NCBI GenBank assembly: GCA_001643675.2
Contig: LSRY02000032.1
Location: 992,001 to 1,056,000 of the forward strand
Length of the DNA: 64,000 nt
Reading direction: 5' to 3'
Source of the DNA: Monocercomonoides exilis PA203
Lineage: Eukaryota; Protista; Preaxostyla
Shown: one piece after another, positions 8,047 through 57,773 of the stretch
How the letters are laid out: each line of letters opens with the position of its first letter
How positions within the stretch are numbered: position 1 is the first letter of the stretch
The notes under the pieces: generated by a model
Told to the model about the DNA's origin: nothing
Seen by the model: the letters and a program-made list of their open reading frames with translations, nothing else
Databases searched by the model: none
Made by a program: the position numbers and the translations under genes

Positions 8047-8047
<1 letters not shown>

Positions 8048-8399
8048 ATATTTGCTGTTGATTTGAAAAATTTACTTATTTATTTTTTTGCAAAATTCAG
8101 TAAATATTTTTGGAATATATTAAAAAATATGAAATCAAAAATCCCATTTTTATATGATGAGGAATTAAAACTTGCTTTGAAAAAAATAACAAATGAGATA
8201 TGAATGAATGAAAGATGATGGTGTGAGTGCAACCTTTTCATTGCTTCTTATTATTATTCTTTCATTTGGAATTGAAGAGCACAAGCATATTGTTATCCAA
8301 TTTTTGAATGAAAACAACATAGCTTTCTAAACACAATTGCATTATCAATAATCAGATTTAGGGTATTTCGTAAAAATACACAGGTGTGCAAAGTGGTTA

Positions 8400-22739: not shown

Positions 22740-24864
22740 TTAATTCAACAATTTATCAAGTTCATTTACAAGATTGTCGAAGTCCTTAAGACCATCAATA
22801 AATGGCTGAGGGGTGGTGAGGTCAACTCCAGCATCTTTAATGATGTCTATGGGATCTTTTGATCTTCCAGCCTTTGAAAGGTTGATGAAATAGTTTTTGA
22901 TTTAAAATAAAAAACAATGAAAATGTTTCAAACCTTCAGAAGTCCGAAGTATTTTTCAGTTGCTTCTGCATCGCCAGCCAATATTTTTTTAGCGATTAAT
23001 TCGGAAACGCACATCGAAGTTGCGTATTTGTATACATAGAAATTGAGGAAAAAGTGGGGCACTCTCATAAACTCATATGCAATTCGTGGATCTGCCTTCA
23101 ATACATGAGGGAATTCAGGTTCTTTGAGCAAAAACAAAAAAGAAAAATAAAAAAATTTGAAAGAAAAAGAAAGAAAGAAAGAAAGAAAGAAAGAAATTCA
23201 TTAAGAAAACAAAACACTTTATGATAATTTCCAAACTTCCATCTTTGACTAGGCACTGGTCTCCATAGTACACATCATTGATGTCCTTGTACAGTTTGGT
23301 TAGTGAGTCTGGCGTGAGTGGCTCGCCTTTCTCAGCCATTCTGTGCACGGCCAGATCAAACTCTGCGAACTGTATTTGTCGGATGACTGTTCCTTTGTAG
23401 TTGTCGCACTTGTTGTAGACGAGGCTGATCTCCATCTCTTTGTTCCCCTCTTTCCTCGCTTTGTCCAGCAGATACTGGTTGAGCAGCGCCTCGTTCAGCG
23501 TCGACGCTATCTCAGCCACCGCCAGCGAGTAGTGCGCCGTGTGGTAGGGCTGTGCCATGGACGAGTAGTATCCGTGCATCGAATGGCCCAGCTCATGCAT
23601 CATCGTAAAGGCAGCATCGAGCGTGTCGTTGTAGTTCAGGCACATGTAGTGTTTCTTCCGATAGTTGAATATCGAGCACGCATTCGACCTCTTCCCTTTC
23701 GTCTCATACACATCTGCCCACCGCTCTCCTCCCACCAGCGCCTTCCGCGCCACCTCACAATACTCTTCGCCCAGCGGCTTCAGCGCCTCCAGCGACCACT
23801 CCACAGCCTGCTCGTAGGGCACCTTGAGCTCGTAGTCCTTCACCAGCGGCACATACAAGTCGTACATGTCGAGCGAGGGAAGCTTCATGACACGCTGCCG
23901 CACAGCCAGATAGCGGTGGAAGGAGGGAAGCGATTGGTGCATTGCTTCAATAAGCGACGTGTACACAGACAACGGGATGTTATCTTTAAACAAAGAACGC
24001 TCAACACAGCTCGGATACTTGTAAGCCTTTGCATAGAACACTTCACTTTTTATCTGGCCATCAAGCATGCAACATATTGTATTCTTGTTGGATACTAGTG
24101 AGTCATGCATACAACCCCATGCCTTTTTTCTAGTCTCTCGATCAAATGACTCTAAAAACCTGCGATAATTGCCGCGAGTCAATTGCTCAGATTCTCCTTT
24201 TTCATTTGTAATCACTGAAAATGTAATATCAGCATCCATTAACATGGTATAAGATTTTTTGCTTGCTGATAGTGCAGGATCTGCACTCGAAATCAACTTT
24301 TCCTCAAGAGCAGATAATGTGTGAGGCTTAAATCGAACAATTGTATCAAATTTTCGGAGCCATTTTTGCATTCCTTCGAATTCTCTATATTCCTTTAGTT
24401 TTTCGTCTGGAAGACTGAGTAATTCTGGTTCTATCCAAGACTCCTTTGAATCTATTTCAGCAGATTTTACAGTAAGGGAAGAATCCATTCCTTGAGCTTC
24501 GCTGTCTCCATTATCTTCGAACAAACGTATCGATGAATAAACATCTAGATAATGTAGTTTCAGAGAAACTTCATCGCAAATTCGAAATACTTCAATAACC
24601 TTTTCCGGTCCTTCGTGAAGGTGGCCTTCAAACGATTCAAGTGGCTTTACCATGTCATCCAATTTGTTTACGTCTTCTTTCCATTCTTCCAATGAAGAAT
24701 AATTGCTTTAAGCAAAAATTGTGTTATCATATCAAAAGAAATTTAACATGAAAAATAGATAAAATATCTTTCATTCTAACATACCATTTGTCATCCCATT
24801 TATATTTTTCATCTATTTCAGAACGAAGAGGAAGCGTTTTCACAGCCGATGAAGATTTCGACAT
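22740..24864 (-). CDS. pepF: Oligoendopeptidase F (peptidase M3B), bacterial-type, 4 exons
   Basis: N-terminal LPLRSEIDEKYKWD, WADVYETKGKRSNA, zinc motif HELGHSMH, VAEIASTLNE, RQIQFAEF, RVPHFFLNFYVYKYATS and C-terminal DIIKDAGVDLTTP. Three GT-AG introns. Confidence 0.92.
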
Positions 24865-24932
24865 TCTGTTGTAAAACTAACAATAATTTTTTGATCGTTG
24901 ACCCATTGTCTTGTGCATCAAATTCTCAAACA
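24865..24932. promoter_or_regulatory. Putative 68-bp bidirectional promoter region between pepF and the PKS
   Basis: Head-to-head ATGs at 24864 (-) and 24933 (+). This depends on the inferred PKS micro-exon 1. No promoter motif was verified. Confidence 0.4.
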
Positions 24933-27900
24933 ATGCAAGAACCCAGACTCGTATGTTATCGATAACTTGTATTTATACTCAAATAACATGCTTCAAATAA
25001 AATTACCTCTATAAATTAGTACTTTATTGCAGAGCCCGAGATCTTGAAATCTCAGAGCTTTGTTGATGCACTTCTTGTTAGAACGGCAATTTCACCAAAT
25101 AAAATTGCATTTTCGTATCTAGTAAATGGAGAGACAATGGGAAGACAAATGACTTATGCTGAACTGAAAACTCGAGCGCAAGCTATTGCTTCTGTCCTTC
25201 AATCAAAAGGATGCTCAAATAGATGCTGCCTTATGCTGTATCCTTTGGAAGGATTGGAATTTATTGAGGGTTTAAACATATTAATATAGAATTTTCATTT
25301 ACTTATTCAATATTTATTTGTTATCAATTTCTCTTTTTCTAATAAATTCGTTTTTGATGATTAACGTTTTTTTAATTTCTGCTTTCAGCCTTCTTTGGAG
25401 TTATGTTTGCGGGTTGCATTGCTGTTCCATGTTACCCTCCAGATCCTAGTCGTCTTAAGAGAACAATGGCTCGTTTTCGAGCAATTATCGAAGATGCAAA
25501 AAGTCCGGTTGTATGTACAACTAAATTTATGATGGGAATGCTGAAACCAGTGATTGCTTCCGTTCCTGAATTTAATGATATCGAAATCTTGTGGGTTGTT
25601 ACGGATGAAATTGAAAGCGATCAATCTTCTAACTGGATTAATCCTCGCGTTAACAAAGATACAATTTGTTTTCTTCAATACACTTCTGGTTCAACCGGTA
25701 TTCCAAAGGGTGTCATGGTGTCTCATGGAAATTTAATTGCAAACGTTAAAATAATTACAGAAGGGTTTCACTATCATCCTTCATTTACTGTGCTTTGCTG
25801 GCTTCCATTGTATCACGATATGGGTCTTATTGGTCACGTATTTGGACCTATATGGATTGGATGCCCCACAATAATTATGGCCCCTACAGATTTCTTGAAA
25901 AAACCGTCGCGCTGGCTGAAAGCGGTATCAGACTACCGCTGTGCCGTTGCTGGAGGGCCGAATTTTGGATTTGAGCTGGCGATTCGGAAGACGACGGAAG
26001 AGCAGAGAGACCAACTTGACTTGTCGTGCTGGGAGATGGCTTACTGCGGCTCAGAGCCAATTCACCCGAAAGTTGTGGAGAACTTCTTTTCGTTTTTTGG
26101 GCCTGCGGGTGCCAGGCGGAATATCTTCACGCCATGCTACGGCTTGGCTGAAGCGACGCTGATGGTCACGTCGCACACACGCGGGACGATCCCACGGATG
26201 TTGATGCTGGACATGGACTCACTCGCACAGGACGAGGCTGTGATGTACTACTACCCGAAGGAGACAGAGCCCGACGGGTCAAAGGCAAAGTCCATCAAAT
26301 ACTTGATGACTGCTGGAAGAATTGTGCGCGGCGTTTGCGTGCGAATCGTGTCGACGAAGCCGCCTTTTGTTGCTCAGAAACCAGGAATCGTCGGAGAAAT
26401 TTGGGTCACTGGAGAAGCCACTGCGCTTGGCTACTGGGGACGAGAAGACGCTACGCGCGAGGCGTTCAGGGCGTTTCTGGCATCAGGCGAGGGTCCCTTC
26501 TTGCGAACAGGCGATTTGGGCTTTTTGAACTGCGGCGAGCTGTTTATTTGCGGAAGATTGAAGGATATGATGATCATTGGAGGAAAGAACATCTATCCAC
26601 AAGACATAGAGACAGCAGTGGAGATGCATGTCGATGAGATTCGAGGCGGTTGCTCTGCTGCTTTTGCGCTGGATGGTGTTGAAGCAGAGAAGATCATCTA
26701 CGTTGCAGAGACGAAGACAGACGTGGAGGCAGAAGAAGGAAAGGACATTGTGCATCGCATTGTTGATATTGTCTCTGCACAATGCGAAGTGGCGCTTTCG
26801 TGTGTTGTTTTAATCAAAGAAAGAACGATTCTGAAGACAACATCTGGCAAAATCCAGCGGCGTGCCACGAAAGAAGCATTTCTCAAGAACGAGCTTGATG
26901 TGCACTTCAGCTGGACAGAAGGGCAGCCATTGGGCCCATCGCCAGTTGATCCCAAAGAGAAGAAGAAGAAGCAACAGCAGCAGCCAGTCATCTCCACACC
27001 TTCTCCGATCCTGATGCCTTCTCCCACAATGTCGCCCAGCATGAAGCAGCCCATCCTCTCCACAGCCACCGCACTGGAGTTGGAGTACCGCGATTTCCTG
27101 TGCAAGCGCATTGCAGAGCGAACAGTCACAGAGCCTTCTCTTGTCGACCCCAACGACACATTCTCCTCCTTCGGCATCTCATCCAGCGAAGGACTCGTGC
27201 TGATCGGAGAAATCGAAGACCACATCAACGCCAAGCTTGCTAATTCTGTGCTGTATGAGCATCCAACCATCGCCACACTGTCGCACTATCTGGCTGAGCT
27301 GTCTATCGCCACAAATGCCCCTCGCTATCAGCGCCTCGGCCAAGATGCAGACAGAGCAGAAGAGCTGAGGGCAGATATGAATCCTGTGCCGATGGACCAG
27401 AAAGACATGTTCAACTTCGATGGACTCAAACGCAAAGCGAACGAAGCAGCAGAATCAGCTTCGGCTTCTGCTTCAGCATCAGCATCAGCTTCATCTGATG
27501 CCTCTATCACATCTCCTTCTTCTGTTCTGTTTCCTTCAGCTGACTCTTCTTCAGACACAGCAACCACAGTCAGCAGCGGTGAGTCTATTGCGATTGTCGG
27601 TATGAGCTGCCGTTTCCCTGGTGCCCACTCGACACAAGAGTTCTGGAACAACATCTGCAACGGAGTAGATTCCATCACCCGTGTGCCTTCCTCTCGTTGG
27701 GATGCTGATGCATTCTATTCACCTGCTCCATCCACACCTGGCAAGATGAACACACGAATGGGCGGCTTCATCGACGGCATCGACCAGTTTGACAGGCGCT
27801 TCTTTGGCCTCACAGCAGAAGAGGCAGCAGCGATGGATCCACAACAGCGTCTTGTGCTGGAAGTGGCTGTGGAAGCAATCGAAGATGCAGGAATGCCACT

Positions 27901-30900
27901 AAACGAGGTGCAAGGATCGATGATGGGCGTGTTTGTGGGCGTTGGTGGATCAAGCGATTACACTTCCATGCAGCACAACCCATCTTCCTTGTCGAAGTCA
28001 AGTCCCTTCACCGCAACTGGATCATCACCTGCAATTGTATCTAACAGACTGTCGTATTTGCTTGATATTCACGGACCTTCTGTTTCGATGGACACTGCGT
28101 GCTCATCATCTCTTGTTGCGTTGGATGCTGCCTGCACAGCCATCAGAAACGGAACATGCACCTCTGCACTGACAGCAGGCGTGAATGTGATCTTATCTCC
28201 GCTGGTGTCTGTGAATCTCTCACAGGTCGGATTTCTCTCACCAGACGGCCACTGCAAAGCATTTGATGCCTCTGCGAATGGCTATGTGCGGAGCGAAGGG
28301 TGCGGGTGTGTTGTGCTGAAGCCGCTGTCTGCTGCGCTGCGGGACGGCGACCGCATCTACGCGTGTGTGCGCTCGACAGCAGTCAACCAGGACGGCAAAT
28401 CGAACGGGCTGACTGCACCCAACCCGAAGGCGCAGGAAGAGTGTCTGAGAGCAGCAGTGGCAGGGGCGTTGGTGGACGGCGCAGCAGTGCAGGTGATAGA
28501 GGCACACGGGACAGGCACAGCACTCGGTGACCCCATCGAAGCCAAAGCAATCTCACACGTTTATTGCCCACCGAACAGAAATGCTAAGAATCCGCTGCTT
28601 GTAACTGCAGTGAAGTCGAACATTGGCCACTCTGAAATTGCTGCTGGAATGGCTGGGCTGATCAAGACAGCGCTGTCTATCTACACAAAAGTGATTCCTG
28701 GTGTTGCCCTCTTCAGAGAATGCAACAACGCCATTGACGAAGAGCAGCTCAAAATACAAATCGTGAGAAAGACACAGGAATGGCCAGAGCTTTCTGTTGG
28801 AATGGTTCGATTGGCAGCAGTCTCGTCCTTTGGCTTTGGAGGCACCAATGCCCATGCTGTACTGCAAGAAGCACCAAAAACAAAAGATGATTCAGAGACT
28901 GAGCCAATTATGCAGAAGAAGGATGCAGTTGGTGCCAGCATGTCACCACCACCTGAATCATCCTCATCTCCAAGTGGAAACGAGAATGAGAACTCACTTC
29001 CTGTTGTGCTTCCTCTGTCTGCAAAGACACAACCATCGCTGAAGCTGCTTCTGTTTGCCTTCAAAAAGTACCTGAAGGAAATGGAACAGAACAGCTACAC
29101 ATATTCTCTCCCATCGCTTGTCTCTCCGCTGTTCTTCAACCGCAATCACCATCCAGAGCGTGCAGCTGTCACTGGACGGAATGTGGAAGAGCTTGTCGGC
29201 TCGATCGATGCACTACTCAGCGACAAGCCACCAAAAGTGGGCGGAGCAACAGGCAGAGCAGCAAGAAATGTGGGCGCAGGCACAAAAGTTGGGTTTGTGT
29301 TTGTGGGACAAGGAACAGCATATCCACACATGTGCCAGGAGCTGATGAAAGTGGAAGGACCGTTCAAAGACACGATGACAAAGATACAGAAAATGATTCT
29401 GGAAATCAATCCTAAATTGGACATTTTGAAAGAGATGATGTTAGACAAAGAGAACAGCCGACTGAGTGCATCTACAGCAGTGTCTCAACCATGCATATTT
29501 GCAGTGGAGGTGGCGCTGGCGGAGCTGGTGAAGTCGTGGGGTGTGGAGGCGTCGGCAGTGGTGGGGCACTCGATTGGGGAGATTGCAGCGAGTGTGGTGT
29601 GTGGAGCGATGAGCATGGAGGAGGCGGTGCGTCTGGTGGTGATCCGTGGGGAGTGCATGAGCCGAGCGAAGGAAGGCGGGGCGATGGCGGCAGTGGAGAT
29701 GTCAGTGGAGGAGGTGATGAAAGTGCTGGAGAAGTGTGGAGTGAAAGAGAGCTCGGTGACGATTGGGGCGTGGAACAGCCCAACATCGGTGACGCTGTCG
29801 GGAGAAGCAGGAGCGATGGACAAAGTGCTTGGGGAGCTGGAGAAGACAGGAGTGTTCTGCCGGAAACTGGATGTGTCGTCGGCGTTCCACACGTGGTACA
29901 TGGACTCAGCGCGAGAAGAGCTGGAGAAGCGACTGGGGGTTGTGAAGAACACACATGGGAAGATTGCGTTTGTGTCGACAGTGAGTGGGGAAGAGATTGA
30001 TGGAGAAGAGCTGACAGGAGAATATTGGGGAAAACAAATCAGATCCCAAGTCAAATTCTGCAAAGCTATCGAAACAATGGAAGAAAATTTGAAAATTCGC
30101 ACTTTCATTGAGATCGGACCTCATCCAGCACTCACACGAAACATTGCAAGTTGTGTTGAAGCAGCTGCCACATCATCTGCTTCGGCGTCAGCCACAATTA
30201 TTCCCACTCTTATTCGAAATGAAGATTCATCAGTTGCCATCTCCACAACCATATGCCATCTTTACACAGCAGGAATCCTGCTTCCACAGGCTGTCAGTGC
30301 AATCTTTGGCATTGTGCGCAAGCCATTCTATGAGACACCATTTATTGCATCTCATCCACTTCCACTCACTCCATGGAACCACGAGCGATGCTGGGTGGAC
30401 ACAGTCTCATCAGAACCCTTCAGAGCAGCTGCACTCCTCTCAAAAACAGCAAGTGCGGTTGATCCACTGGCTGAAGATGCCTCATATGAAGAGCATTTTG
30501 TACCTTCTTCATTGCCAGCCACAAGAACAGGATCAAAGAAGGACAAGAACTTTGTTGTGCTGCTGCCGCAGAAGGAGATGACCGAGCCAATGAAGTATTT
30601 GGTTGAACTGTTTGCCAGAAAAGGAGACAGAGTGGTGTTTGTTCTCCCACCAGCCACTGCGCATCACTCATTCAGCAAATCAAACGAGAAAGGCAAACAG
30701 GAAAAGAAACAGGCAAAGATCGAAATTCTGACACCACAAACAAATGAAGTTGTGAGAAGCTATCTGTCTGGATTGAAGCCGAAAGGAAGATCAACTTCAG
30801 CTTCAGCATCATCCTCTTCTTCTTCTGTTGTGGAATGCCCAGACCAGTTTCTGTTTCTGCAGACCCCGTCGGATCCATCTCGGTTGCCGACGCTGTTTGA

Positions 30901-33900
30901 GATGATGGGCACACACTTCATCGGAGGAAGTGAAAGCGAAGGAGCATTCTCTGTGGTGTATGGCTGGGCACTCGACGGAGTGTCGTCTGATTCGAGTGAG
31001 TTGAAAGCACCCACATCAGCCGTGGCAGCCACCTTCCACACGTTTGTGTCGTCGTGGATTGCACACTTTTCGAGTGTTCCTCGTCTGTTTGTGCTGACAG
31101 CGGGTGTGGCACCTGTGGAACGCACAGGAAATGCCCTGTCGAGCACAGCTGGATGCAGCCACTTGACACGCTTGGCTGATCTGCAGAAGGAGAAGACAGA
31201 AGACGCGAAGGATGTGCCAAACACACTTTCTGAGGCGCCTCTGTGGGGATATGCAGGGAGCATTGGAGTGGAGTATCCAGACTCTCACTGCAGTGTGGTG
31301 GATGTGAGTGCTGCACCCGAGGCATCAGCTGAGGATGTGGCTGTGTTATATGCTGAACTCCACTCAGCTGCCGAGCAGAGCGAAGATCGAGTGGCCATCC
31401 GCGAAGGCAGCAGGCTGGTGGCAAGACTCCGAAAGGGAGCAGTGTTTGGGAGCGAGCTGGAGAATGAGGAGAACAACTTTGAGGCAGAAGAGCAGAAACA
31501 GCATGGAGCAAGGAAAGGAGAGAGCAGTGGAGCATATGTGATCACAGGTGGATTTGGCGGGTTTGGGCGAAGAGTGGCAGCGTTTCTGGCATCGTCTGGT
31601 GCGACAGCGATTGTTCTGGTGGATGTTGCGATTCCTCCGCCGTCGTCGCCAGCAGGCACAGCCGTTGCGACGCTGAAGTCGGCCTTCAGCCGGTGCAAGT
31701 TCGACGCGATTGCATGCGACGTGGGAGATGCACAGACGCTGCGGAAGAAGCTGATGGAGGTGCCATCCATTGGTCCCAAACTGCGCATCCGCGGGGTGAT
31801 GCACTGTGCAGGGCTGTTATCGCAGAAGCTGATTGTGCAGTTCAACGAGGAGGAGATGACAAAAGTGATGCGGCCGAAGGTGGAAGGAGGATGGGCGCTG
31901 CACGAGATTGCGTTGGAATCTGCGCGTCTGTCGCCTTCTGTGCTGAAGCACTTTGTGGTGTGGTCGTCGATCTCTGCTGTTGTCCCCACACACGGCGAGG
32001 CTGCATATGCATCGGCCAATGCGTTTCTGGATGCCCTGACACAATACAGACGATCAATTGGACAGCCATCCACGTGTCTGAACTGGGGTGTGATTGGCGA
32101 TGCAGGAATGATCACAACACAGTCATCAGCCACGCTGAATGCGATGAAAGACATCGGCCTTGGATCCACACCGATCGACACAGCAGTCAGAATTCTATCA
32201 CACACACTTCAGTTCCCTCCAGCAAATGGGCAGCAGCAGGTGTATCGGCTGGACTGGCAGAAATGGTTGGAGCTGCACCCAGCAACAAGAAGATACGATG
32301 AAGTGAAGCCACGTCCAATATCATCAACAGCCAGCCTGCTGGATGCATACGAGCAAGCAGGAGCATCCGATGCATCAGCCTCAGCATCTTCTGCATCTGC
32401 TTCGAGTTCAACGTCTGCCTCAGGAGCAGCAGGAGGCATTGCACGAAGCTTTGAGGAGATCAAAGAGTGGCTGCTGGATGCAGTGAGCGAACATCTGGGA
32501 ATGAAAGCAGAGGAGATCTCGCCTGAAGAGCCGTTGATGCAGTATGGCCTGGACAGCATGGGAGTGATGTCGCTGACACGGGCACTGTCATCATATCTGG
32601 GTGTGACTATTTCACCCACACTTTTGTATTCATACAGCACAGTCACACAGATCGCATCACACTTTGCAGCTTCTGATGAAGAGCTGGCTCAATCATCTGC
32701 CTCTGCTTCATCATCGTCATCTGGTTCATCATCATCAATTTTGAAGAAGGAAGCATCACTTGGCAAGTCATCTCCACTCGACTCGTCTCTGGCAATTGTG
32801 GGAATGAGCTGCAGATATCCAGGCTCGTGCCACTCGCTGGCTGAGTTCTGGTCGTTCCTTCAGACGAAGAAGGATGGTGTGATTGCAGTGCGACCAGACA
32901 GATGGGACATTGAGACATACTTGGCGAAGGACAACGACACGCAGGCGCCTGGAAAGATGGTGTCTCCGTGTGTTGGGTCATACGATGAGATGGACAAGTT
33001 CGATCCACACTTCTTTGGGATCTCTCCGAGGGAGGCAGAGCGGATGGATCCGCAACAGCGTCTGGTGCTGGAGTGCAGCTGGGAGGCGCTGGAAGATGCA
33101 GGAATTGTGCCAGAGTCGCTGAGCGGGAGCGACACGGGGGTGTTTGTGGGCATCTCGTACTCAGACTACGGAATGATGCAGAACGGGAGCATCAATGATG
33201 TGAACCCGTACTCTTCGACAGGTGGGGCACTGTGCATGGCAGCCAACAGGCTGTCGTATCTGCTCGATCTGCGCGGGCCGTCAGTGGCGTGTGACAGCGC
33301 GTGCTCGTCTTCGCTGTCTGCGCTGCATCTGGGCGCAAACTGCATCAAGCAGGACGAGTGCAATCTGGCCATTGTGAGTGGTGTGAACTCAGTGCTGCTG
33401 CCACACGGAGCCATTGCCCTGACGAAGACAAGTGCTCTGTCGCCAGAAGGAAAGTGCAAGACATTCGACTCCTCTGCCGATGGGTTTGTGCGTGCTGAGG
33501 GGTGCGGTGTGGTGATCCTGAAGCCTTTAGCACAGGCTCTGCGTGATGGCGACCGCATCTATTCGACGATCCTGGCATCGCTGCTGAACCAGGACGGAAG
33601 AAGCAATGGACTCACTGCACCGAACGGACTTGCACAGCAAGCGCTGCTGAAGGGTGTGTATGCGAAGGCAGGAATCGATCCGTCGGAGGTGTCGTTCATC
33701 GAGACACACGGAACAGGTACGAAGCTCGGCGATCCAGTGGAGGTGCAGTCACTGTGTGCTGTGCTGTGCCAGAAGGGCAGAGACGCAGAGACAGCTCCAC
33801 TGCATTTGGGATCAGTGAAGTCAAGGATTGGCCATTCAGAGTCAGCTGCTGGTGTGGCGTCGCTGATCAAAACGAGTCTGACGCTGTGGAAGAGGAAGCT

Positions 33901-36900
33901 GACACCGAATCTGCATGTGAAGGAGCCGAACGAGATGATTGCGTGGAAGGAGTATCCATGTCTGCATGTGCCAGTGGAGTGCAGCACACTCTACTCGCAG
34001 GAGTATCTGAAGCAGCTGAAGAAGCAGCATCTTCCTCTTCCGCAATACGATGTGCCTGAATCGAGTGAGAAGAGCAACGAGGAAGAAGAAAGCGCTGCAG
34101 GAGAAGACAAAGGCACTTTGTATGCAGGTTTGTCTTCATTTGGATTTGGTGGGACGAATGCACACATTGTGGTGCAGAGTCCACTTTCGTCGTGGGAGCC
34201 AAAAAGACACAGCGGAAAGCAGTCGAAACGGACACACTTTATGCTTCCTCTGTCAGCACGCTCAGACAGCGCATTGCAGAACCTGGCTGGGAAGTATCGC
34301 GACTACATCTTGTCATCAGCATCTTTGAGGAAGATGAAGAAGAGCCAGGCAAAGAAAGAAGGAGAAAAGCGGATTGAATTCTTTGATGCACCTGCTGATC
34401 TCCAGGCTGCTGATTTGTGCTACACAGCTGCCTTCAGAAGACAGCATCTGTCGCATCGTGGATGCTTCTGTGCATCATCACTCGAAGAGCTGGCAGAAGA
34501 GCTCGACCGCTTTGCACGACAGGCACCTGCACCAGAAAGAGCGAAGGGAGAGCCAGCAAAGACAGCCACCGTGACTGGAACGCTTCCCGTTTCAACAGTT
34601 CAGAGACGTGTGGGATTTGTCTTCACTGGACAGGGATCTCATTGGCTTTCGATGGGAAAGAGATTGATTGAGAGCGACCCAGTGGTGAAGAGGACAATTG
34701 CACAGATTGATGCACTGGCACAACGTGTGTTTGCTTCATTGAAAGCAGAAGATCCAAAGAGGAAAGTATTTGAGTTCTCCATCATGGAGGAGCTGATGAA
34801 TGAAGATGAGAAGGAATCACACATGAAATCAACAGCAGTGTCTCAACCATGCATATTTGCAGTGGAGGTGGCGCTGGCGGAGCTGGTGAAGTCGTGGGGT
34901 GTGGAGGCGTCGGCAGTGGTGGGGCACTCGATTGGGGAGATTGCAGCGAGTGTGGTGTGTGGAGCGATGAGCATGGAGGAGGCGGTGCGTCTGGTGGTGA
35001 TCCGTGGGGAGTGCATGAGCCGAGCGAAGGAAGGCGGGGCGATGGCGGCAGTGGAGATGTCAGTGGAGGAGGTGATGAAAGTGCTGGAGAAGTGTGGAGT
35101 GAAAGAGAGCTCGGTGACGATTGGGGCGTGGAACAGCCCAACATCGGTGACGCTGTCGGGAGAAGCAGGAGCGATGGACAAAGTGCTTGGGGAGCTGGAG
35201 AAGACAGGAGTGTTCTGCCGGAAACTGGATGTGTCGTCGGCGTTCCACACGTGGTACATGGACTCAGCGCGAGAAGAGCTGGAGAAGCGACTGGGGGTTG
35301 TGAAGAACACACATGGGAAGATTGCGTTTGTGTCGACAGTGAGTGGGGAAGAGATTGATGGAGAAGAGCTGACAGGAGAATATTGGGGAAAACAAATCAG
35401 ATCCCAAGTCAAATTCTCAAAAGCAATTGAGTATATGATCAAGTCACCACTTCACATCAACACATTCATCGAGCTTGGCCCACACACATCGCTACTGGGC
35501 TATATTAAGCGTGTTGCTGCTGTGGCTTCATCAGCACCATCATCGATTCAGCTTGTGGGATCATTGCGCAAAGGAGAGAATGAAAGTCTGTCGATGCTGT
35601 CAGCATTGGGACATTTGTTCTGTGGAGGAATGAAGCCGAAGTGGAGCCAGGTGGGTGGATACGATGGAGTGTTTGTCCGAGCACCAACATATGCATGGGA
35701 TCACGCGAGCTATTGGCTGAACGACTCGATCATCAGCCACTCAATCAGTGCGAGGATGTCACCAATCACAGGAAAGATGGTCAGCGGACGATCGAATTCA
35801 GCAGAGCTGGCCAAGATGCAGGGAATGGACTCACTCTCCATTCTGAACGGAACACCCACAACACATCCACTTCTCCGCTTCCACACAGAATATGCAGGAG
35901 GCATCCACATCTGGGAGACTCCGCTGAAGAAGGACGAGTCTGCACGTCGCTTCATCTACGACCATTATGTGATTGGGGCAGTGCTTGTGCCTGGTGTGAC
36001 ATACATCGAGATGGGTCTTGGACTGTCAGCACTTCTCAATGGAGACGGACCACACACGATCACAGACATCCGATTCGACAAGCCGCAGTTTTTGAACGTG
36101 GAAGATCCACGACACTACCAGATCCATCTGGTTCCAGTGCCAACCACATCGAGCGAGGCTGTTGGAACAATCGACATCTATTCACGTGCACCAGTTGCAG
36201 AAGACGAAATCAAATCTTCTTCTGCCTCTGCATCTGCCTCAGCATCATCTTCTGATAAATCAGGTGCCAGTGGAGAAGACAGCTCGAAGGTGCAGTGGAC
36301 ACATCACGCATCGATGACAACACACTTTTTGAGAGAAGACGGCTGGTATTCTGCGCCAAAACAGGCCCAGCTGCAGAAGAAAGTTGATCTGAAGAAGCTG
36401 AAAGAGCGATGCCCGAACGAGCTGACAAGAGCAGAGTATTACGACGAGCTGTTTGAGAGAGGACTGCAGCTGCGAGATCGGTTCAAGGGAGTGACAAATG
36501 TGTATCTGTCAGACACAGAATGCTTGGCAAGGATTCAGCTGGCAGAAGGAAACGACCGAAGAGGAATGCATCTGCACCCGACGATGCTGGACTCTTCGCT
36601 GCAGTGTGCAGGAGCAATGCTTCTGTTCCACCGCACGCTGACCGACAAGCGGGGCATCTACTTGCCAGTCTCACTGGACAAACTGCATTCGTGGCGCCAG
36701 TGGCCAGATGTGGTGTTTGCGTGGGTGCGTCTGCTGTCCTTCCAAGAGAACTCGCTGCTGGTGGACATCACAGTGTATGACGAAGATGGACTGGAGGTGG
36801 CTGATATCCACCACTTCCGCTGCAGATACGTGGAAGACACACGAAATGTGGAGGACGACATGTATAACGTGATCTGGACAGAAAGCTTGCTGAAGGCAGA

Positions 36901-39900
36901 GGACGAGATTAAGCACAAGGAAGCAGAGGATGAAGACGGAAATGCTGAAGAAAGAGAGAAAGGAGATGATGGTGAGATAGAGAAGATTGTACCAGAGGGA
37001 GAGAAGAAAGCGAAGGAAAGCTATGTTGTGCTGCTGTGCGGCAACGAAGAGACTCCACAGAACAAAAGAGTGAATCGACTGGCAAAAGCGCTGACCGAAA
37101 GCGGATTCGCTGTGTATCGAATGTATTTCAGTGAAAATGGATCCGGATTTGATGGAAAGAAGAAGATCGCTCGGGTGAGGATGGTGGAGAAAGAAGACTA
37201 CGAAAAAGCGCTGACACAAATTGCAGAGGCTGCTTCGAAATCTGGACGAAATGTTTGTGCAGCCATCATTCATGGAGCATTACTGAATGACGAGACACTT
37301 CTTGCAGCTGAAGGCGCAACAGAAGCTACACTTCACAAAGTTCAATATGATGGATGCTTGTCTGCACTTCAGATTGTGCAGTCCATTATGACTCAAACTG
37401 CTCCTCCTCGTCTGTTTATTCTGACAGCAGGAGCACATGATATCAAGTGCAGAAACAATGAAGCAGCAGCACTTGTTCAACCAGGTGCGTTCTCTATGTG
37501 GGGCTTTGGAGGAGTTGTGCAGAGCGAATGCCCAACATTGCGTGCAACGTTGATTGACTTCACAAACACCGGAAAGGACGAACTGGACGAAGAAGAAGCT
37601 AAAACATTTGCACAGCTGGTGACAGTTGGCTCGCTTCAACAGAATGTGATTGCATCGATTGCAGCAGCAGACAGTGAAGCGTTGAGAGAGGAAGAAAATT
37701 CATCAGCATCGAATGAAAAGAAAGAAACAGCCAACAATGGAACAGCATCATCACCTGCAATGCTTGCACTCGAACAGAATATTGCTCTCTCGCACAATCG
37801 TGTCTTTGTGGATCGAATTGCAAAGGCACAACGTCCAGTTATTCCAATTTCAACAGAAATGGCTGGCTTCGATTCACCGCTAGCATGGAGACTGGAGATT
37901 GGCAAGCCAGGCAATCTGCAGACTCTCCGTGCTGTGGAGATTCCTCCAATTTCAGCAGATAAATGCGATCCAGTTACACACAGACGAAACCCAGAAGCTG
38001 AAGAGCTGGAGCTGAAGGTGTATGCAGTTGGAGTGAACTTCCGAGATGTTCTGAAGTCGATGGGGCTGTATCCAGCAGAATTTGACGAGACACTTTATTT
38101 GGGAGCTGAATGCTCAGGTATTGTGACAAAGGTTGGAAAGGATGTGAAGAGCGTGAAAGTGGGTGATCGTGTTGTTGTTTGTGCATCTTCGTGCTTTGCG
38201 TCATATGTCATTGCGAAGGAGGCCTACACAGCTGTTATTCCAGAGAACATCTCGTTTGAAGAGGCTGCATCGCTTCTGGGTCCGTTTTTGACTGCTCATT
38301 ACGGACTGGTGACTGAAGCTCGCATCAAAAAGGGAGAAAAAGTGCTGGTGCATCTGGGATCTGGTGGTGTTGGTATGGCAGCGATCATCATCTGCAACTA
38401 CTTTGGATGCGAGGTGTTTACCACAGCTGGGTCGCCAAAGAAACAAGAAGTTGTGACAAAACCTCCATTCAACGTGAAGCCTGAAAACGTGTTCAGCTCT
38501 CGAACGCTGGCATTTGTGGATGGAATTCGTGAGAGGACAAACGGAAGAGGAGTAGATGTGGTGTTGAACTCACTGACTGGTGAAGGGCTGGAAGAAGGCT
38601 TCAGATTGTTGGCACCACGCGGACGATTTGTGGAGATTGGCAAAAGAGACATTTACAACAACTCGCGAATTGGAATGCAGCCATTTGCACATAATGTGAA
38701 ACTGATAACTGTTGCTATGGACGGATTATTTGATAAGCACACAGAGGTTTCTTCGAATGTTATGCATGATGTTATGGATCTCTTTGCAACTAAAGCTTAC
38801 ACTCCAATTCCATACATTGCATATCCAATAAGCGATGTGACGTCCGCTTTCTTGCTGATGGCTGGAGCAAAGCACATTGGAAAGATTGTGTTGACATTGC
38901 ACGATGCTCCTGCTATTCCTGTGGAAATGCGTCCAATTCGCTCTCTGACTGCGAAGGAGGATGTGGATGACGGTGCATTCGTTGTGACAGGAGGATTGGG
39001 TGGCCTTGGCCAAGCTCTTCTTCGATGGCTGGCTCAGCGAGGAGCCACACAGCTGGCTGTTCTGGAGATGCGAAGTGAAGAAGAGATGAGAGAAAGAGAC
39101 AAGACAAACACGATTGGCCGATGCTTGGACTCTCTTCGTCACCACGGATGCCGAGTGGAGGTGTTTGTGACAGATGTGTCAGACAAAGCGAAGTGCAAGG
39201 CAGCAGTTGATGCTGCACGGAAGTCATTTGGAAAGATTGTTGGAGTGTTCCATCTGGCTGGCATCATCGACGACTGCCTCATCGACCAGCTGGACGTCAA
39301 GCGATTCCTGCGTGTGTGTGCCCCGAAGATTGCAGGAGGATGGAATCTGCACGAAGCAACACTACCCGACAAGCAGACACTGCGATACTTTGTGCTGTTT
39401 TCGTCTGTTGCAGCTATTCTTGGACAGCCAGGACAGACAAATTATGCTGCTGCAAACTCATTCTTGAACGGTCTTGCACAATATCGAAGATCTGCTGGTC
39501 TGCCTGTGACATGTTTGAATTGGGGTCCGTTGAGTGGAGCTGGAATGATGGCGCGAAATGAGGAGCTGACAAAAGCAACAGAAGCACAAGGCATCCACAT
39601 GATCACAATCAAACAGATGCTGACTGCAATGCACATCATCATTGACAGAGATCTGAAGCTGCACAAAGAACCAGCAAAGAAAGAGAAAGGAGAAAAGAAT
39701 GAAGAGACAGCAGAAAGGAATTGCTCAGAGTGGTCGACTGGAGTGCTGCAGGTTGACTGGGAAAGGTGGTTCAGCCGCAACCCATTTGCTGCGAGATCAC
39801 CTCGTTTCTCATATCTTTCATCGAATTCTGCGCAGGCAAGCCATTCAGCCGCACTGAAGCTGAGGAAAGCAGTGCTGAGCGAACAGAACGAAGAGAAGCA

Positions 39901-41089
39901 AATAGCAATGCTGGGAGAGGTGCTGACACGACTGGTGAGTGCAGTGACTGGACTGGCTGAATCAGCAATTCCGGCAGAGCGACCTTTGAACGAAATGGGC
40001 TTGGATTCGATGGTGGCAGTTGAATTGAGAGCACGGATGGACCAGGAGATCGGATATTCAGTTCCAATTGTGACATTCGTGCAGGGTGCATCTGTGAAGG
40101 CTGTGTGCGAAAACATTCTGGAGCAGATGAAAGGCTCTTCACAGTCTTCATCTTCCTCTGCCTCTGCCTCTGCCTCATCATCTGCTTCATCGTCTTCTGC
40201 TTCGAGTAGCGCAGGTGCGAAGAGCGAAGCGATGGTGGAGCTGACGAAGGGATCAGGAGCAGTCTATGCTATTGTGTGCCAAGCAGGTGGAGTGGCATCT
40301 TCAATGAACGGACTTGCAAATCATATGACACAAATGCTGAAGAGAGGCGTGGTGGCATTTGAAGATCCATCACTTTATGGAACAGCAGCTCCATTCAAGT
40401 CAGTGAAGGAAATGGCCACACAGTACATTGCACTGCTGAAGGAGAAGCAACCGAAAGGCCCATATTCATTGTGCGGATTCTCATTTGGTGGCTTTGTGGC
40501 ACAAGAAATGGCACATCAGCTGATCGAGAAAGGCGAAGAGGTGGCAACACTGTCGCTGGTGGATCCTCCATCACCATCTCTGTGTGGTGCGAAGACAACG
40601 AGAGGAAGATCAGAGACATGTGCTGTGCTGTTGATGGCAGCCGGAGTGAAAGGAACAGCAAAGGTGAACGACAGTGTGGCAAAGCGAGTGATGAAGCGGT
40701 TGAGCGAAGTGAAGGAGGATAGCAGCGAGGCAAGATGGAGCGTGTGTGTGGAAGAGCTGAAGAAGATTGGAGTGATCACAAGGCCAGGAGAGGAAACAGT
40801 GCTGAAGAAGACTTGGACAGTTATTGCCAACGAGATTGAACTGCTTCCATCACATCACCCAGATATCATTGCTGGAAGCAGTGGATCAACAACTAAATGC
40901 ATATTGTACCAGCCGCAGCAGAACAAGAAGTTTGTGAAGGACTTGTTGCTTCTGGACGAGGCAGAGAGCGAGTGGCGCAAGATTATTCCATCTCTTCAGG
41001 CTGTGCCTATTCCTGGAGATCATTGGACAATCATCGGTGCAGAACTTATGGACGAGACAGCTGATCTGCTGGCAAAGGCGGAACAGTGA
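24933..41089 (+). CDS. Modular type I polyketide / fatty-acid synthase: FAAL-ACP | KS-AT-KR-ACP | KS-AT-DH-ER-KR-ACP | TE (~5,300 aa; two 5' introns and one 15.7-kb exon)
   Basis: FAAL: FLQYTSGSTGIPKG, WLPLYHDMGLIG, YGLAEATL, LRTGDLGF, KTTSGKIQR. ACPs: GISS, GLDS, GLDS. KS1: DTACSSS/HGTGT/KSNIGH. KS2: DSACSSS/HGTGT/KSRIGH. ATs: GHSIG and SAFH. KR1: GGFGGFG/YASAN. DH: HYVIGAVLVP and DSSLQ. ER: NFRDVL and LVHLGSGGVG. KR2: GGLGGLG/IDD/YAAAN. TE: GFSFGG and GDH. Intron 25270-25388 joins ORF 25044-25289 to the 5228-aa ORF in frame. The 24933 start is tentative. Confidence 0.95.
29474..30059 (+). repeat. 586-bp direct repeat, copy 1 (AT1 core)
   Basis: Identical on visual comparison to 34832-35417 (offset 5358). 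The ORF track shows matching incidental ORFs in both copies. Confidence 0.92.
34832..35417 (+). repeat. 586-bp direct repeat, copy 2 (AT2 core)
   Basis: Identical on visual comparison to 29474-30059. Confidence 0.92.
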
Positions 41090-42820: not shown

Positions 42821-43787
42821 AGAAAAAATTGATCAAGAAATAATATATTAATTATTTTTTTCACTTCTCAAAGATATAAAAAAATGTGTTCGAAAAAACG
42901 CTTATTGAAGGAATATCAAAATATCTCTTTTTATACTAAATTTGCATCTTTTATCATTAACACAGTCATATTCAAAAATTATAACAAAAATGAGAATCAA
43001 AGAGACAACACGAATTAACAAAATAATTAAAAATAAAACAATTTTTTGATAAATGTCTCATTCATACACAAAAATACTCAACATTCATTTTTTATGATTT
43101 TGACCTATGATAAATGCTCATTCATTATTTCTTATTCATTTGATTGAATAAAAACATATTAACAATTATTGAAAAAATACACGCGGCATTAAAGGCAAAA
43201 ACAGAACATTATTTTTATGATTTCATTTCCGTTAATTTTAATAAAAGAGGTTTTCTGTTTAATTTTTTACAAAAATTAAGAAATGATTGAAAGATTTTTT
43301 TGTTTATTGATGAACAAGCTAATTTTCAAAAACATGTTTGATAACGCAGAATTTTCAGCGTTTTTGAAAGAGTCATTTCTCGTGATTTTTGAGCAAAATT
43401 TTCAGTGAAAAATCAATGTACATTAAGTTTCATTTAACAAGAAAATTTATAAAAGAAAATAGGTATATTTTTCGAGCAACTGATTCACTTTTTTGTAATT
43501 CCTTCTTGTAATAAGCTTAAATATAATATTTTGATCGATATTCAAAGCAAATATGAAGTGAACTATCTATTTTGAGAAAAGAAAGGACGCAAGAGATTAA
43601 ACTTAAACAAAAAATTGGAATGAGAAATAAAACATTTCAAAAAACTTTTTTCTTCAAAATTATTTTTCTGATCCAATAGGTGTAATATATATAACTAATT
43701 TTTCGTCAACAAACCATTTGCGACATCAAGCAAACAAAATTGATTTTGTTTTTTTATTTAGAAGGATATATTTCCTTGACTTATATT

Positions 43788-57200: not shown

Positions 57201-57773
57201 CAGAGTCCCAATCGCCATCTCCTTCTTCTCGTTCCTCCCGTGAAGCAGCATGAACAGCGAATCTCTTAGATCCACAATCAGCTTCTCGTAAGGGCATGAG
57301 CAGGCCATTGCATCCACCAGATTCGACATGGACGAGGTGGTTGGACACAGATCCTCTCCGCGAACAAATGTGGATTCTGTGTCTGAAGTGTCTGTAGTGG
57401 AAGTGGATGAAATGGATGGTGAAGGTGATCTCTTTCGAATCTCTTCTTCTTCAACCTTTTCCAGCATCCATTGAGGAATCTTATCAGAGTCATTTCCAAG
57501 AATATATTCAGTCGATCCACTCTCAGAGAGAAGATGCTCTGATGACTCTGAATGTCCAAGGCTTTTCTCATACACTCTCTTCTTTATCCTTTCATCGTTC
57601 TTCGTCTCTGCCTCCTTCTCTGCTCTTCGCCATTGTGCCTCTGGAGACATCTCCATTGTCACCATCTCAATAAGCTTTGGATCCTTTTTCACTGTGTCAT
57701 TCACAATCTCTTCCAATTCCTCTGTCCTTCTCTTTTGCTTTCTCCATCGAACAATAAAAATTATTGATACAAT
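54243..57773 (-). repeat. Right arm (3.53 kb) of the giant inverted repeat
   Basis: Reverse complement of 50409-53941, separated from it by a unique 301-bp spacer (53942-54242). Confidence 0.93.
55206..55607. mobile_element. Mirror copy of the (TA)n-flanked MITE-like element
   Basis: Reverse complement of 52576-52978 within the right arm. Confidence 0.6.

What the first reader, a model, noticed from the sequence alone, without database searches (positions are those of the whole stretch)
24933..41089. Complete FAAL-primed bimodular PKS in an intron-rich, oxymonad-like genome; predicted 5-hydroxy-fatty-acid / delta-lactone synthase
Seen in the sequence: one polypeptide with a FAAL-ACP loading unit (~25044-27300), module 1 KS-AT-KR-ACP with no DH or ER (~27580-32670), module 2 KS-AT-DH-ER-KR-ACP (~32790-40130) and a TE (GFSFG...GDH). 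All the catalytic motifs I checked are intact. Established knowledge: FAAL-ACP loading of a preformed fatty acid is used by mycobacterial FadD/Pps, cyanobacterial lipopolyketide synthases and the Cryptosporidium megasynthases. It differs from the single-module iterative animal and fungal FAS. GHSIG with xAFH suggests malonyl-CoA extenders. KR1 lacks an LDD motif (A-type-like), while KR2 has IDD (B-type, as expected before a DH). Inference: collinearity gives R-CH(OH)-CH2-CH2-CH2-COOH (starter plus 4 carbons), which the TE could release as a delta-lactone. If the host is an anaerobic, lipid-scavenging gut flagellate, this would be a dedicated modified-lipid or signal pathway. It could easily be annotated simply as a 'fatty acid synthase'.
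Basis: partly seen in the sequence, partly recalled or inferred. Interest (0 to 1): 0.9.

Follow-up and report, generated by a model that had tools for sequence, protein, structure and literature searches.

The report
Two-module fatty-acid-primed polyketide synthase gene
This is a real, spliced gene of the mitochondrion-less protist Monocercomonoides that encodes a 5,322-residue enzyme built to load a ready-made fatty acid, lengthen it by two C2 units and leave one hydroxyl; close relatives keep the same design, but its product is unknown.

Summary
A three-exon gene (24933-41089, + strand) encodes one protein with 13 domains in this order: FAAL-ACP / KS-AT-KR-ACP / KS-AT-DH-ER-KR-ACP / TE. All the catalytic residues I checked are intact. 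Spliced RNA contigs confirm both introns. The genome's size and contig count match the M. exilis PA203 long-read assembly, and the neighbouring genes are ordinary eukaryotic genes.

New findings:
- The same 13-domain order occurs in Blattamonas, Paratrimastix and Mastigamoeba. FAAL, KS1 and KS2 trees each recover these proteins as one clade among bacterial modular PKS and FAAL sequences.
- A second copy lies 305 kb upstream. It is about 99% identical in protein from mid-KS1 to the TE, but its loading module is old and divergent (dS about 1.9).
- The cores of the two AT domains are identical over 586 nt, which points to conversion within the gene.
- The genome holds a PPTase and a likely malonyl-CoA source.

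The predicted product, a 5-hydroxy acid or delta-lactone, follows from collinearity but is untested. KR1 stereochemistry cannot be called. Automated annotations already name these genes as PKS, and a 2026 FAAL survey mentions FAAL-PKS in Preaxostyla. The scan also flagged the upstream copy separately. I class it as a new member of a known kind, of moderate interest.

The parts
24933..24950 (+). Exon 1 (start codon plus 5 codons)
   Evidence: First ATG after the in-frame stop at 24885-24887. The RNA joint 24950>25020 has GT..AG ends in 4 runs.
24951..25019 (+). Intron 1 (69 nt, GT..AG)
   Evidence: Skipped in RNA contigs of 4 runs.
25020..25269 (+). Exon 2, the N-terminal part of the FAAL domain
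   Evidence: RNA contigs cover 25020-25268 and join to 25388/9. The second copy has a homologous exon with the same boundaries.
25270..25388 (+). Intron 2 (119 nt, GT..AG)
   Evidence: Skipped in RNA contigs of 4 runs.
25389..41089 (+). Exon 3, including the stop codon at 41087-41089; it carries all the remaining domains
   Evidence: Uninterrupted frame. RNA contigs lie along the part that was laid, up to 30600.
25020..26917 (+). FAAL (fatty acyl-AMP ligase) loading domain; the span given includes intron 2
   Evidence: Pfam AMP-binding and AMP-dom_DIP2-like. Best solved matches are the FAALs 7r7e and 3kxw, E 1e-110 and 1e-95, aligned end to end. NCBIfam FAAL models score 310-350 bits against about 100 for FadD CoA ligase.
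27098..27292 (+). ACP0, the loading carrier domain
   Evidence: Pfam PP-binding. The attachment serine (ORF residue 594) is invariant in orthologues.
27581..29107 (+). KS1 with its C-terminal extension
   Evidence: Pfam. Cys900, His1035 and His1076 are invariant. Best single-KS solved match is CurL at 432 bits, against 283 bits for animal FAS.
29294..30271 (+). AT1
   Evidence: Pfam Acyl_transf_1. Ser1390, Arg1415 and His1496 are invariant, and the specificity motif is of the xAFH type.
29474..30059 (+). 586-nt tract in the AT1 core, identical to 34832-35417 in AT2
   Evidence: The second gene copy has the same internal repeat, with 2 mismatches.
31529..32095 (+). KR1 catalytic subdomain; the structural subdomain lies upstream, from about 30500
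   Evidence: Pfam KR. Lys2159, Tyr2202 and Asn2206 are invariant. The LDD position is not LDD, and the A-type tryptophan is absent.
32465..32662 (+). ACP1
   Evidence: Pfam PP-binding. Ser2385 is invariant.
32786..34519 (+). KS2 with its linker
   Evidence: Pfam. Cys2634, His2769 and His2811 are invariant. CurL scores 382 bits against 258 for FAS.
34616..35632 (+). AT2
   Evidence: Pfam. Ser3176, Arg3201 and His3282 are invariant.
34832..35417 (+). Second copy of the 586-nt identical tract, in the AT2 core
35864..36841 (+). DH
   Evidence: Pfam PKS_DH_N and PS-DH. His3521, Gly3525, Pro3530, Asp3730 and Gln3734 are invariant.
37997..38893 (+). ER
   Evidence: Pfam ADH_N, ADH_zinc_N and ADH_zinc_N_2. 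The nucleotide-binding glycines 4321-4324 are invariant.
38972..39535 (+). KR2
   Evidence: Pfam KR, E 3e-57. Asp4623 and Asp4624 (LDD-type motif), Lys4642, Tyr4681 and Asn4685 are invariant.
39920..40111 (+). ACP2
   Evidence: Pfam PP-binding. Ser4869 is invariant.
40280..41086 (+). Type I thioesterase
   Evidence: Pfam Thioesterase. Solved matches are the NocB, EntF, Pks13 and FAS TE domains. Ser5027 and His5207 are invariant.

Best explanation
The gene encodes an expressed, functional type I polyketide synthase of the cis-AT modular kind, fused to its own fatty-acid loading unit.

Shown here: the domain order, intact catalytic residues, splicing, purifying selection, and conservation of the whole architecture in related protists.

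Inferred mechanism:
1. The FAAL domain adenylates a free fatty acid and transfers it to ACP0 without a CoA intermediate.
2. KS1 condenses it with malonyl-ACP1, and KR1 reduces the new keto group to a hydroxyl, which stays.
3. KS2 adds a second malonyl unit, and KR2, DH and ER reduce that unit fully.
4. The TE releases the chain.

If each module acts once, the product is the starter acid plus four carbons with a hydroxyl at C5. It would be released as a free acid, a delta-lactone or an ester. The chain length of the starter is unknown.

The second gene copy keeps the same extension modules but has an old, divergent loading module. The cell therefore probably feeds two different starters into the same chemistry.

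The gene entered an ancestor of Preaxostyla from a bacterial-type PKS lineage and has been inherited vertically since. A Mastigamoeba gene shares that origin.
For: - Architecture: Pfam order and scores.
- Catalytic residues: invariant across M. exilis, Blattamonas, Paratrimastix and Mastigamoeba.
- FAAL identity: solved FAALs are the best matches, and NCBIfam FAAL models outscore CoA-ligase models.
- KS affinity: modular PKS KS domains outscore animal FAS by more than 120 bits.
- Expression: GT..AG joints in RNA contigs of 4 runs. All 26 variant letters in those contigs are the bases of the second copy, so both copies are represented.
- Selection: between the two copies, dN/dS is 0.02-0.16 over AT1 to TE.
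- Conserved asymmetry: the KR-only first module and fully reducing second module are kept in all four species, domain for domain.
- Phylogeny: KS1 clade 98/72 (100/96 for Preaxostyla alone), KS2 clade 100/98, FAAL clade 98. The branching order within Preaxostyla follows the species order.
- Support enzymes: an AASDHPPT-type PPTase and three copies of a carboxyltransferase, pyruvate-carboxylase-CT and biotin-carrier fusion.
- Eukaryotic setting: Nup93, adaptin, kinase and M3 peptidase neighbours, with GC3 like theirs.
Against: - No product has been observed, and collinearity is an assumption. Modules can iterate, and a DH can act on the previous module's intermediate.
- KR1 fits neither the A-type nor the B-type motif, so the configuration of the hydroxyl cannot be called.
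- The mode of TE release cannot be read from sequence.
- The RNA runs are labelled 'synthetic metagenome' and were available only as contigs from one study. If they were simulated from annotated transcripts, they are not independent evidence of expression.
- The tree position among bacterial sequences is a polytomy, so no donor can be named.
Confidence: 0.65

Rival explanations
1. The enzyme works as a fatty-acid elongase and not as a collinear PKS. In this reading, one or both modules iterate, or the module-2 DH and ER also process the module-1 hydroxyl. The product would then be a longer saturated acid, or an acid hydroxylated further from the carboxyl end, destined for membrane lipids.
For: A published analysis found no components of short-chain fatty-acid synthesis in M. 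exilis (PMC6759080), so megasynthases might fill lipid needs. The related Cryptosporidium loading-unit synthases are reported to act as elongases (my recollection, not tested here). Module 2 has the full FAS-like reducing set.
Against: A KR-only first module has been kept in four species over deep divergence, with separate KS1 and KS2 orthologue clades. That is hard to explain if the hydroxyl is always removed. The genome also has three separate FAS-like KS-AT-DH-MT-ER-KR-ACP-AT genes that are better candidates for bulk synthesis. The KS domains score nearer modular PKS than FAS.
Confidence: 0.2
2. The chain is built as in the best explanation, but the TE is a transferase and not a hydrolase or cyclase. 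It would pass the hydroxyacyl chain to an acceptor such as a sugar, a lipid head group or CoA, as the Pks13 TE does in mycolate synthesis.
For: The Pks13 TE is among the solved matches and is the best NCBIfam match of the TE region. The Mastigamoeba orthologue carries an acyl-CoA-binding (ACBP) domain directly after the TE.
Against: The matches are weak (E 1e-6 to 1e-13) and equally close to hydrolytic and cyclising TEs (NocB, EntF, FAS). The ACBP fusion is absent from the three Preaxostyla proteins and could be a gene-model fusion.
Confidence: 0.12
3. The locus is a bacterial contaminant, a dead gene or an assembly artefact, and the identical AT tract comes from collapse or over-polishing.
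For: The nearest non-protist relatives are bacterial. The assembly was polished with ten rounds of Pilon (PMC8767320), which could in principle homogenise repeats.
Against: The gene has two spliceosomal introns that are removed in RNA. It sits inside a 1.19-Mb contig among eukaryotic genes, and its GC3 is like its neighbours'. There is no stop or frameshift in 15.9 kb, and dN/dS is far below 1. The AT tract differs at 19 sites between the two gene copies but at 0-2 sites within each gene, which fits conversion within the gene and not collapse.
Confidence: 0.02

Closest known systems
Orthologues in Blattamonas nauphoetae (P0001, 'putative FadD26'), Paratrimastix pyriformis (P0002, 'putative EryA1') and Mastigamoeba balamuthi (P0087)
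   Same: They have the same 13 domains in the same order. Identity is 54%, 40% and 34%. The same catalytic residues are present, and FAAL, KS1 and KS2 each group as one clade.
   Different: None has been characterised. The Paratrimastix model has about 1,090 extra C-terminal residues with a NADAR domain, and Mastigamoeba has a C-terminal ACBP domain. The identical AT1/AT2 core is specific to M. exilis.
Cyanobacterial olefin synthase (Ols; the FAAL structure 7r7e comes from this type by my recollection) and CurL/CurM-type modules
   Same: The N-terminal half, FAAL-ACP-KS-AT-KR-ACP, is the same, and a TE sits at the end. The FAAL and KS domains are the best solved matches.
   Different: Ols has a single module followed by a sulfotransferase before the TE and makes a terminal alkene. 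Here Pfam found no sulfotransferase domain, and a second, fully reducing module is present.
Mycobacterial FadD26 plus PpsA-E (phthiocerol) and FadD32 plus Pks13
   Same: A FAAL hands a long fatty acid to a PKS. KR-only modules are followed by a fully reducing module, which leaves hydroxyls in an otherwise saturated chain. This logic is known from the literature. FAAL, Pks13 and Pps-type models all match.
   Different: There the FAAL and the modules are separate proteins, methylmalonyl units are used, and five or more modules act. Scores here are far below the curated cut-offs of those families, so the resemblance is analogy and not membership.
Cryptosporidium CpFAS1 and CpPKS1 (loading ligase-ACP plus 3 or 7 modules plus a terminal reductase; from my recollection of the literature)
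   Same: A eukaryotic single polypeptide with an acyl ligase-ACP loading unit, followed by non-iterative modules in an anaerobic or parasitic protist.
   Different: Those enzymes end in a reductase and not a TE, and CpFAS1 modules are all fully reducing. No apicomplexan protein appeared among the best 120 hits of any search, so they are not close relatives.
Animal-type iterative FAS and the three FAS-like genes of the same genome (contigs C31, C23 and C2)
   Same: They share the KS, AT, DH, ER, KR and ACP domain families.
   Different: They have a single module, no FAAL, a methyltransferase-like domain and a terminal acyltransferase. Their KS domains form a separate clade.

Membership tests
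Type I modular cis-AT polyketide synthase | KS, AT and ACP domains fused in modules on one polypeptide, with at least two modules | tested here: met
   Two KS-AT-...-ACP sets in one reading frame.
Type I modular cis-AT polyketide synthase | Catalytic Cys-His-His in each KS; Ser and Arg in each AT; attachment Ser in each ACP | tested here: met
   Invariant columns in the four-species alignment.
Type I modular cis-AT polyketide synthase | KS domains related to modular PKS KS domains, not to iterative FAS | tested here: met
   CurL, PikA, DEBS and MAS score 330-432 bits against 258-283 for animal FAS. Both KS domains sit among bacterial cis-AT KS domains in the trees, although no FAS outgroup beyond the genome's own FAS-like genes was included.
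Type I modular cis-AT polyketide synthase | Each module used once (collinear operation) | not testable with these tools
   Needs product analysis. The conserved difference between the two reductive loops is indirect support only.
Fatty acyl-AMP ligase (FAAL) loading domain | ANL-superfamily adenylation fold whose closest relatives are proven FAALs | tested here: met
   7r7e, 3kxw, FadD23, FadD32 and FadD28 are the top solved matches. FAAL models rank above CoA-ligase models in NCBIfam, though below their curated cut-offs.
Fatty acyl-AMP ligase (FAAL) loading domain | FAAL-specific insertion that blocks the CoA-ligation conformation | tested here: inconclusive
   The stretch around ORF residues 255-305 aligns with the corresponding stretch of 7r7e and is longer. 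I placed the insertion from memory and did not model the structure.
Fatty acyl-AMP ligase (FAAL) loading domain | Dedicated carrier domain directly downstream as acceptor | tested here: met
   PP-binding domain at ORF residues 566-630 with a conserved serine.
Malonyl-specific AT | Aliphatic residue in the GHSxG motif and a Phe-containing xAFH motif, not the Q and YASH of methylmalonyl ATs | tested here: met
   Both ATs carry Ile in GHSxG and an xAFH-type motif. Both motifs lie inside the identical tract. The motif rule comes from the literature and is predictive, not proof.
B-type ketoreductase (KR2) and A-type ketoreductase (KR1) | LDD motif for B-type; conserved Trp eight residues before the catalytic Tyr, with no LDD, for A-type | tested here: inconclusive
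   KR2 has the DD of the LDD motif in all species, so it is B-type. KR1 has no LDD in any species and no Trp at the A-type position, so its type is undetermined.
Animal-type iterative fatty acid synthase | Single KS-MAT-DH-ER-KR-ACP-TE module with no loading ligase | tested here: not met
   Two modules plus FAAL-ACP.
Olefin synthase (Ols/CurM type) | Sulfotransferase domain between the last ACP and the TE | tested here: not met
   No sulfotransferase family appears in the Pfam scan of the C-terminal third.
Cryptosporidium-type loading-unit megasynthase | Terminal thioester reductase domain | tested here: not met
   The terminal domain is a Thioesterase (PF00975). No NAD_binding_4-type reductase was found.

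The most novel reading that the evidence does not exclude
Preaxostyla, and through a shared origin Mastigamoeba, keep an ancient, truly collinear two-module PKS pathway. It would turn scavenged fatty acids into a specific C5-hydroxylated lipid or delta-lactone with a cellular or signalling role. In M. exilis the two gene copies would form a natural starter-swapping pair: gene conversion keeps the extension modules identical while the loading modules stay distinct.
Probability: 0.3. Interest if true: 0.7.

Novelty: new member of a known kind. Interest (0 to 1): 0.52.

Why it matters
Non-iterative multi-module PKS enzymes are rare in eukaryotes, and almost none has a known product. This one is small (two modules), complete and expressed, and it is conserved domain for domain across free-living and gut-dwelling anaerobic protists. 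Its predicted product is therefore simple enough to test directly.

It also changes the picture of lipid metabolism in the model amitochondriate M. exilis. That genome was reported to lack components for short-chain fatty-acid synthesis (PMC6759080). Here it shows six megasynthase genes: three FAAL-PKS genes and three FAS-like genes. It also has a PPTase and a transcarboxylase-type malonyl-CoA source.

The two gene copies and the identical AT cores are a clear natural example of gene conversion shaping PKS modules while sparing the substrate-selecting loading unit.

Tried and rejected
- The KS1 search of the representative library was ranked by summed scores of giant multi-KS proteins and did not show nearest neighbours. 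I re-scored all fetched proteins domain by domain in a script instead.
- A self-BLASTP to find internal repeats returned only the diagonal. I replaced it with domain-versus-protein BLAST.
- PF08326 (ACC_central) found nothing, but it also found nothing in any control genome, so that blank is uninformative. PF01039 then found the carboxyltransferase fusions.
It found no bacterial protein with the same 13-domain architecture. The next best hit after the three orthologues scored 5346 bits against 7057-8312.
- The Pelomyxa schiedti protein P0403 has a similar FAAL two-module layout, but its KS domains do not join the KS1 or KS2 clades. I rejected it as an orthologue.
I repeated the motif check by residue position only.
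- Literature searches found no paper that analyses these genes. There is a one-line mention in PMC12820801 and automated product names in a supplementary table of PMC10703272.
- I considered and rejected contamination, pseudogene status and assembly collapse (see the rival explanations).
- I did not try structure prediction or complex prediction, because they would not decide the product.
Full report
**Observation.** The window holds one open frame of 5228 codons from 25403 to 41089 on the + strand. Pfam places the domains in this order: AMP-binding with its DIP2-like C-terminal subdomain, PP-binding, KS, AT, KR, PP-binding, KS, AT, DH, ER, KR, PP-binding and Thioesterase. Nothing else of weight was found.

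**Gene model and expression.**
- The ATG at 24933 is the first after an in-frame stop at 24885-24887.
- Contigs from four RNA runs of one study skip 24951-25019 and 25270-25388, both with GT..AG ends.
- The coding sequence is therefore 24933-24950, 25020-25269 and 25389-41089, which gives 5322 residues.
- The first acceptor lies 15 nt upstream of the one I had guessed from the sequence alone.
- All 26 positions where RNA contigs differ from the window carry the base of the second gene copy, so both copies are represented in the RNA.
- Caveat: the runs are labelled 'synthetic metagenome' and were available only as contigs. I cannot exclude that they were simulated from transcript models.
- Procedure: I joined the exons only inside local scripts, to check frame and length and to find the homologous exon of the second copy. 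No joined sequence went to any database search, fold or other tool. All searches used exon 3 by reference.
- Only 24700-30600 was laid with reads, within the 6,000-letter limit.

**Catalytic competence.** Residue numbers below count from the Met at 25403; add 94 for the full protein. I aligned the protein with its relatives from Blattamonas, Paratrimastix and Mastigamoeba. The following residues are invariant:

| Domain | Invariant residues |
|---|---|
| ACP0 | Ser594 |
| KS1 | Cys900, His1035, His1076 |
| AT1 | Ser1390, Arg1415, His1496 |
| KR1 | Lys2159, Tyr2202, Asn2206 |
| ACP1 | Ser2385 |
| KS2 | Cys2634, His2769, His2811 |
| AT2 | Ser3176, Arg3201, His3282 |
| DH | His3521, Gly3525, Pro3530, Asp3730, Gln3734 |
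| ER | glycines 4321-4324 |
| KR2 | Asp4623, Asp4624, Lys4642, Tyr4681, Asn4685 |
| ACP2 | Ser4869 |
| TE | Ser5027, His5207 |

- The loading domain aligns end to end with solved FAALs (7r7e, 3kxw, FadD23, FadD32, FadD28). It scores higher on NCBIfam FAAL models than on CoA-ligase models.
- Both ATs have the malonyl-type motifs.
- KR2 has the LDD-type motif expected before a DH.
- KR1 has no LDD in any species, but it also lacks the A-type tryptophan, so its stereochemistry cannot be called.

**Host and setting.**
- The window is G000:C28:992001-1056000 of an 82.3-Mb assembly in 101 contigs. These are exactly the figures of the M. exilis PA203 ONT assembly (PMC8767320).
- The neighbours are an M3 peptidase, Nup93, an adaptin and a kinase-like protein. 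No biosynthetic cluster is nearby.
- GC3 of the gene (0.52) lies within the neighbours' range of 0.44-0.52.
- With two spliceosomal introns as well, contamination is excluded.

**Relatives.**
- The best hits are Blattamonas nauphoetae (5117 aa, 54% identity, full coverage), Paratrimastix pyriformis (6229 aa, 40%) and Mastigamoeba balamuthi (4856 aa, 34%). Bacterial modular PKS proteins follow at about 30%.
- All three protist proteins have the same 13 domains in the same order.
- A profile of the four scores them at 7057-8312 bits. The next protein, a four-module cyanobacterial FAAL-PKS, scores 5346 bits. No bacterial protein with this exact architecture was found.
- In a careful KS tree, KS1 of the four species forms one clade (98/72; Preaxostyla alone 100/96) and KS2 forms another (100/98). 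Within each clade the order is Mastigamoeba, Paratrimastix, Blattamonas, Monocercomonoides.
- The FAAL tree gives the same clade (98), nested among myxobacterial and acidobacterial FAALs.
- The gene therefore predates the split of Preaxostyla and shares an origin with the Mastigamoeba gene. The deeper position is a polytomy, and no donor can be named.
- A Pelomyxa protein has a similar layout but is not an orthologue by the KS tree.

**Second copy and conversion.**
- The genome has eight KS matches in six genes.
- One of these genes, at C28:712396-728374, lies 305 kb upstream of this gene. An earlier scan note had flagged it.
- It is 95.8% identical in DNA from window position 28013 to the stop codon. 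Similarity ends at the stop.
- In protein it is about 99% identical from mid-KS1 onward, but only 60-77% identical in FAAL-ACP0.
- dS is 1.9 in FAAL, mosaic across KS1, and 0.09-0.14 from AT1 to TE, with dN/dS of 0.02-0.16.
- In the FAAL tree the two M. exilis copies and Blattamonas form a trichotomy.
- The simplest reading is an old duplication whose extension modules are kept alike by gene conversion while the loading modules stay distinct. Intron positions are shared between the copies.
- Within each gene, a 586-nt stretch of the AT1 core is identical to the AT2 core (29474-30059 = 34832-35417). In the second copy the tract has 2 mismatches, and the tracts of the two genes differ at 19 sites.
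- That pattern fits conversion within the gene and not assembly collapse. Blattamonas does not show it.

**Support enzymes.**
- An AASDHPPT-type PPTase is encoded on C51.
- Three loci encode a fusion of about 1,260 residues carrying acetyl-CoA carboxylase carboxyltransferase, pyruvate-carboxylase carboxyltransferase and a biotin carrier. This is a plausible transcarboxylase source of malonyl-CoA.

**Mechanism.**
- Shown: the parts are present, intact, expressed (with the caveat above) and under purifying selection.
- Inferred from established PKS logic: FAAL loads a free fatty acid on ACP0. Module 1 adds C2 and stops at the beta-hydroxyl. Module 2 adds C2 and reduces it fully. The TE releases the chain.
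- If each module acts once, the product is a 5-hydroxy acid four carbons longer than the starter, which a TE could also close to a delta-lactone.
- The KR-only first module has been kept in all four species. This is the main indirect argument that the hydroxyl matters.
- Iteration, cross-module dehydration or release by transfer remain possible.

**Comparison and novelty.**
- In logic the enzyme resembles FadD26 with PpsA-C, and the first half of cyanobacterial olefin synthase. As a eukaryotic fusion it resembles the Cryptosporidium loading-unit synthases.
- It meets the defining features of a FAAL-loaded cis-AT modular PKS. It fails those of animal FAS, Ols and the Cryptosporidium type (see the membership table).
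- It is not unknown. Orthologues carry automated names such as 'FadD26' and 'EryA1'. M. exilis models are called 'polyketide synthase' in a supplementary table. A 2026 survey lists FAAL-PKS in Preaxostyla in one sentence (PMC12820801).
- No paper in the library analyses architecture, evolution or product.
- The 2019 genome paper stated that components for short-chain fatty-acid synthesis were not found. That statement sits uneasily with six megasynthase genes.

**Verdict.** This is a genuine and well-preserved gene, and a new member of a known kind. It has a simple, testable product prediction and an instructive pattern of gene conversion. Interest is moderate.

Noticed in passing
G000:C28:712396-728374 (L002 plus L007), 305 kb upstream of the gene on the same contig: A second copy of the FAAL two-module PKS (5325-codon last exon). 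Its protein is about 99% identical from mid-KS1 to the TE, but its FAAL-ACP0 is old and divergent (dS about 1.9). Intron positions are shared, and RNA contigs carry its alleles.
   Followed up: yes
window 29474-30059 and 34832-35417: The AT1 and AT2 cores are identical over 586 nt inside one gene. The same repeat exists in the second copy, with 19 differences between genes and 0-2 within each gene. This fits conversion within the gene. It is not seen in Blattamonas.
   Followed up: yes
G000:C31:868445-879043 (L004/L009), C23:881480-892495 (L005/L008), C2:1835460-1846376 (L006/L010): Three close paralogues of 3533-3672 residues. The domain order KS-AT-DH-methyltransferase-like-ER-KR-ACP-AT was read on the C31 gene; the C23 and C2 genes were not scanned for domains. 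These FAS-like or HR-PKS-like synthases have a terminal acyltransferase where a TE would be expected. They are candidates for de novo fatty-acid synthesis, which a 2019 paper reported as not found in this organism.
   Followed up: partly
G000:C5:1338000-1347969 (L003, minus strand): A third FAAL-ACP-KS-AT-DH... synthase gene. Its KS groups with a metagenomic FAAL-PKS and not with the KS1 or KS2 clades. The gene runs beyond the stretch I fetched.
   Followed up: partly
G000:C5:1146353-1150132 (L011:854-4633, minus strand), and two further loci on C6 near 1.31 and 1.44 Mb: Three copies of a fusion of about 1,260 residues: ACC carboxyltransferase, pyruvate-carboxylase carboxyltransferase and a biotin carrier, with no biotin carboxylase domain. 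This is a transcarboxylase-type candidate source of malonyl-CoA.
   Followed up: partly
G000:C51:186719-187768 (L001:1033-2082, + strand): A single AASDHPPT-type 4'-phosphopantetheinyl transferase of 349 residues. It was the only PF01648 match in the genome.
   Followed up: partly
window 23115-24864 (minus strand) against 24933 (plus strand): An M3-family oligoendopeptidase gene is transcribed divergently. Its likely start codon at 24864 is only 68 nt from the PKS start codon, so the two genes share a very short head-to-head promoter region.
   Followed up: no
P0087 residues about 4770-4850; P0002 residues about 6070-6210: The Mastigamoeba orthologue ends in an acyl-CoA-binding (ACBP) domain after the TE. 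The Paratrimastix model carries a NADAR domain about 900 residues after the TE, which may be a gene-model fusion.
   Followed up: partly
window 56667-63995 (minus strand) and 43740-51734 (plus strand): Two very long open frames of 2442 and 2664 codons. The first has no Pfam match. The second has only a weak kinase match near its C-terminus.
   Followed up: no
runs X1-X4 (one study): RNA libraries labelled 'synthetic metagenome' hold spliced M. exilis transcripts of both PKS copies. Whether they are real mixed-culture RNA or simulated reads could not be told.
   Followed up: partly
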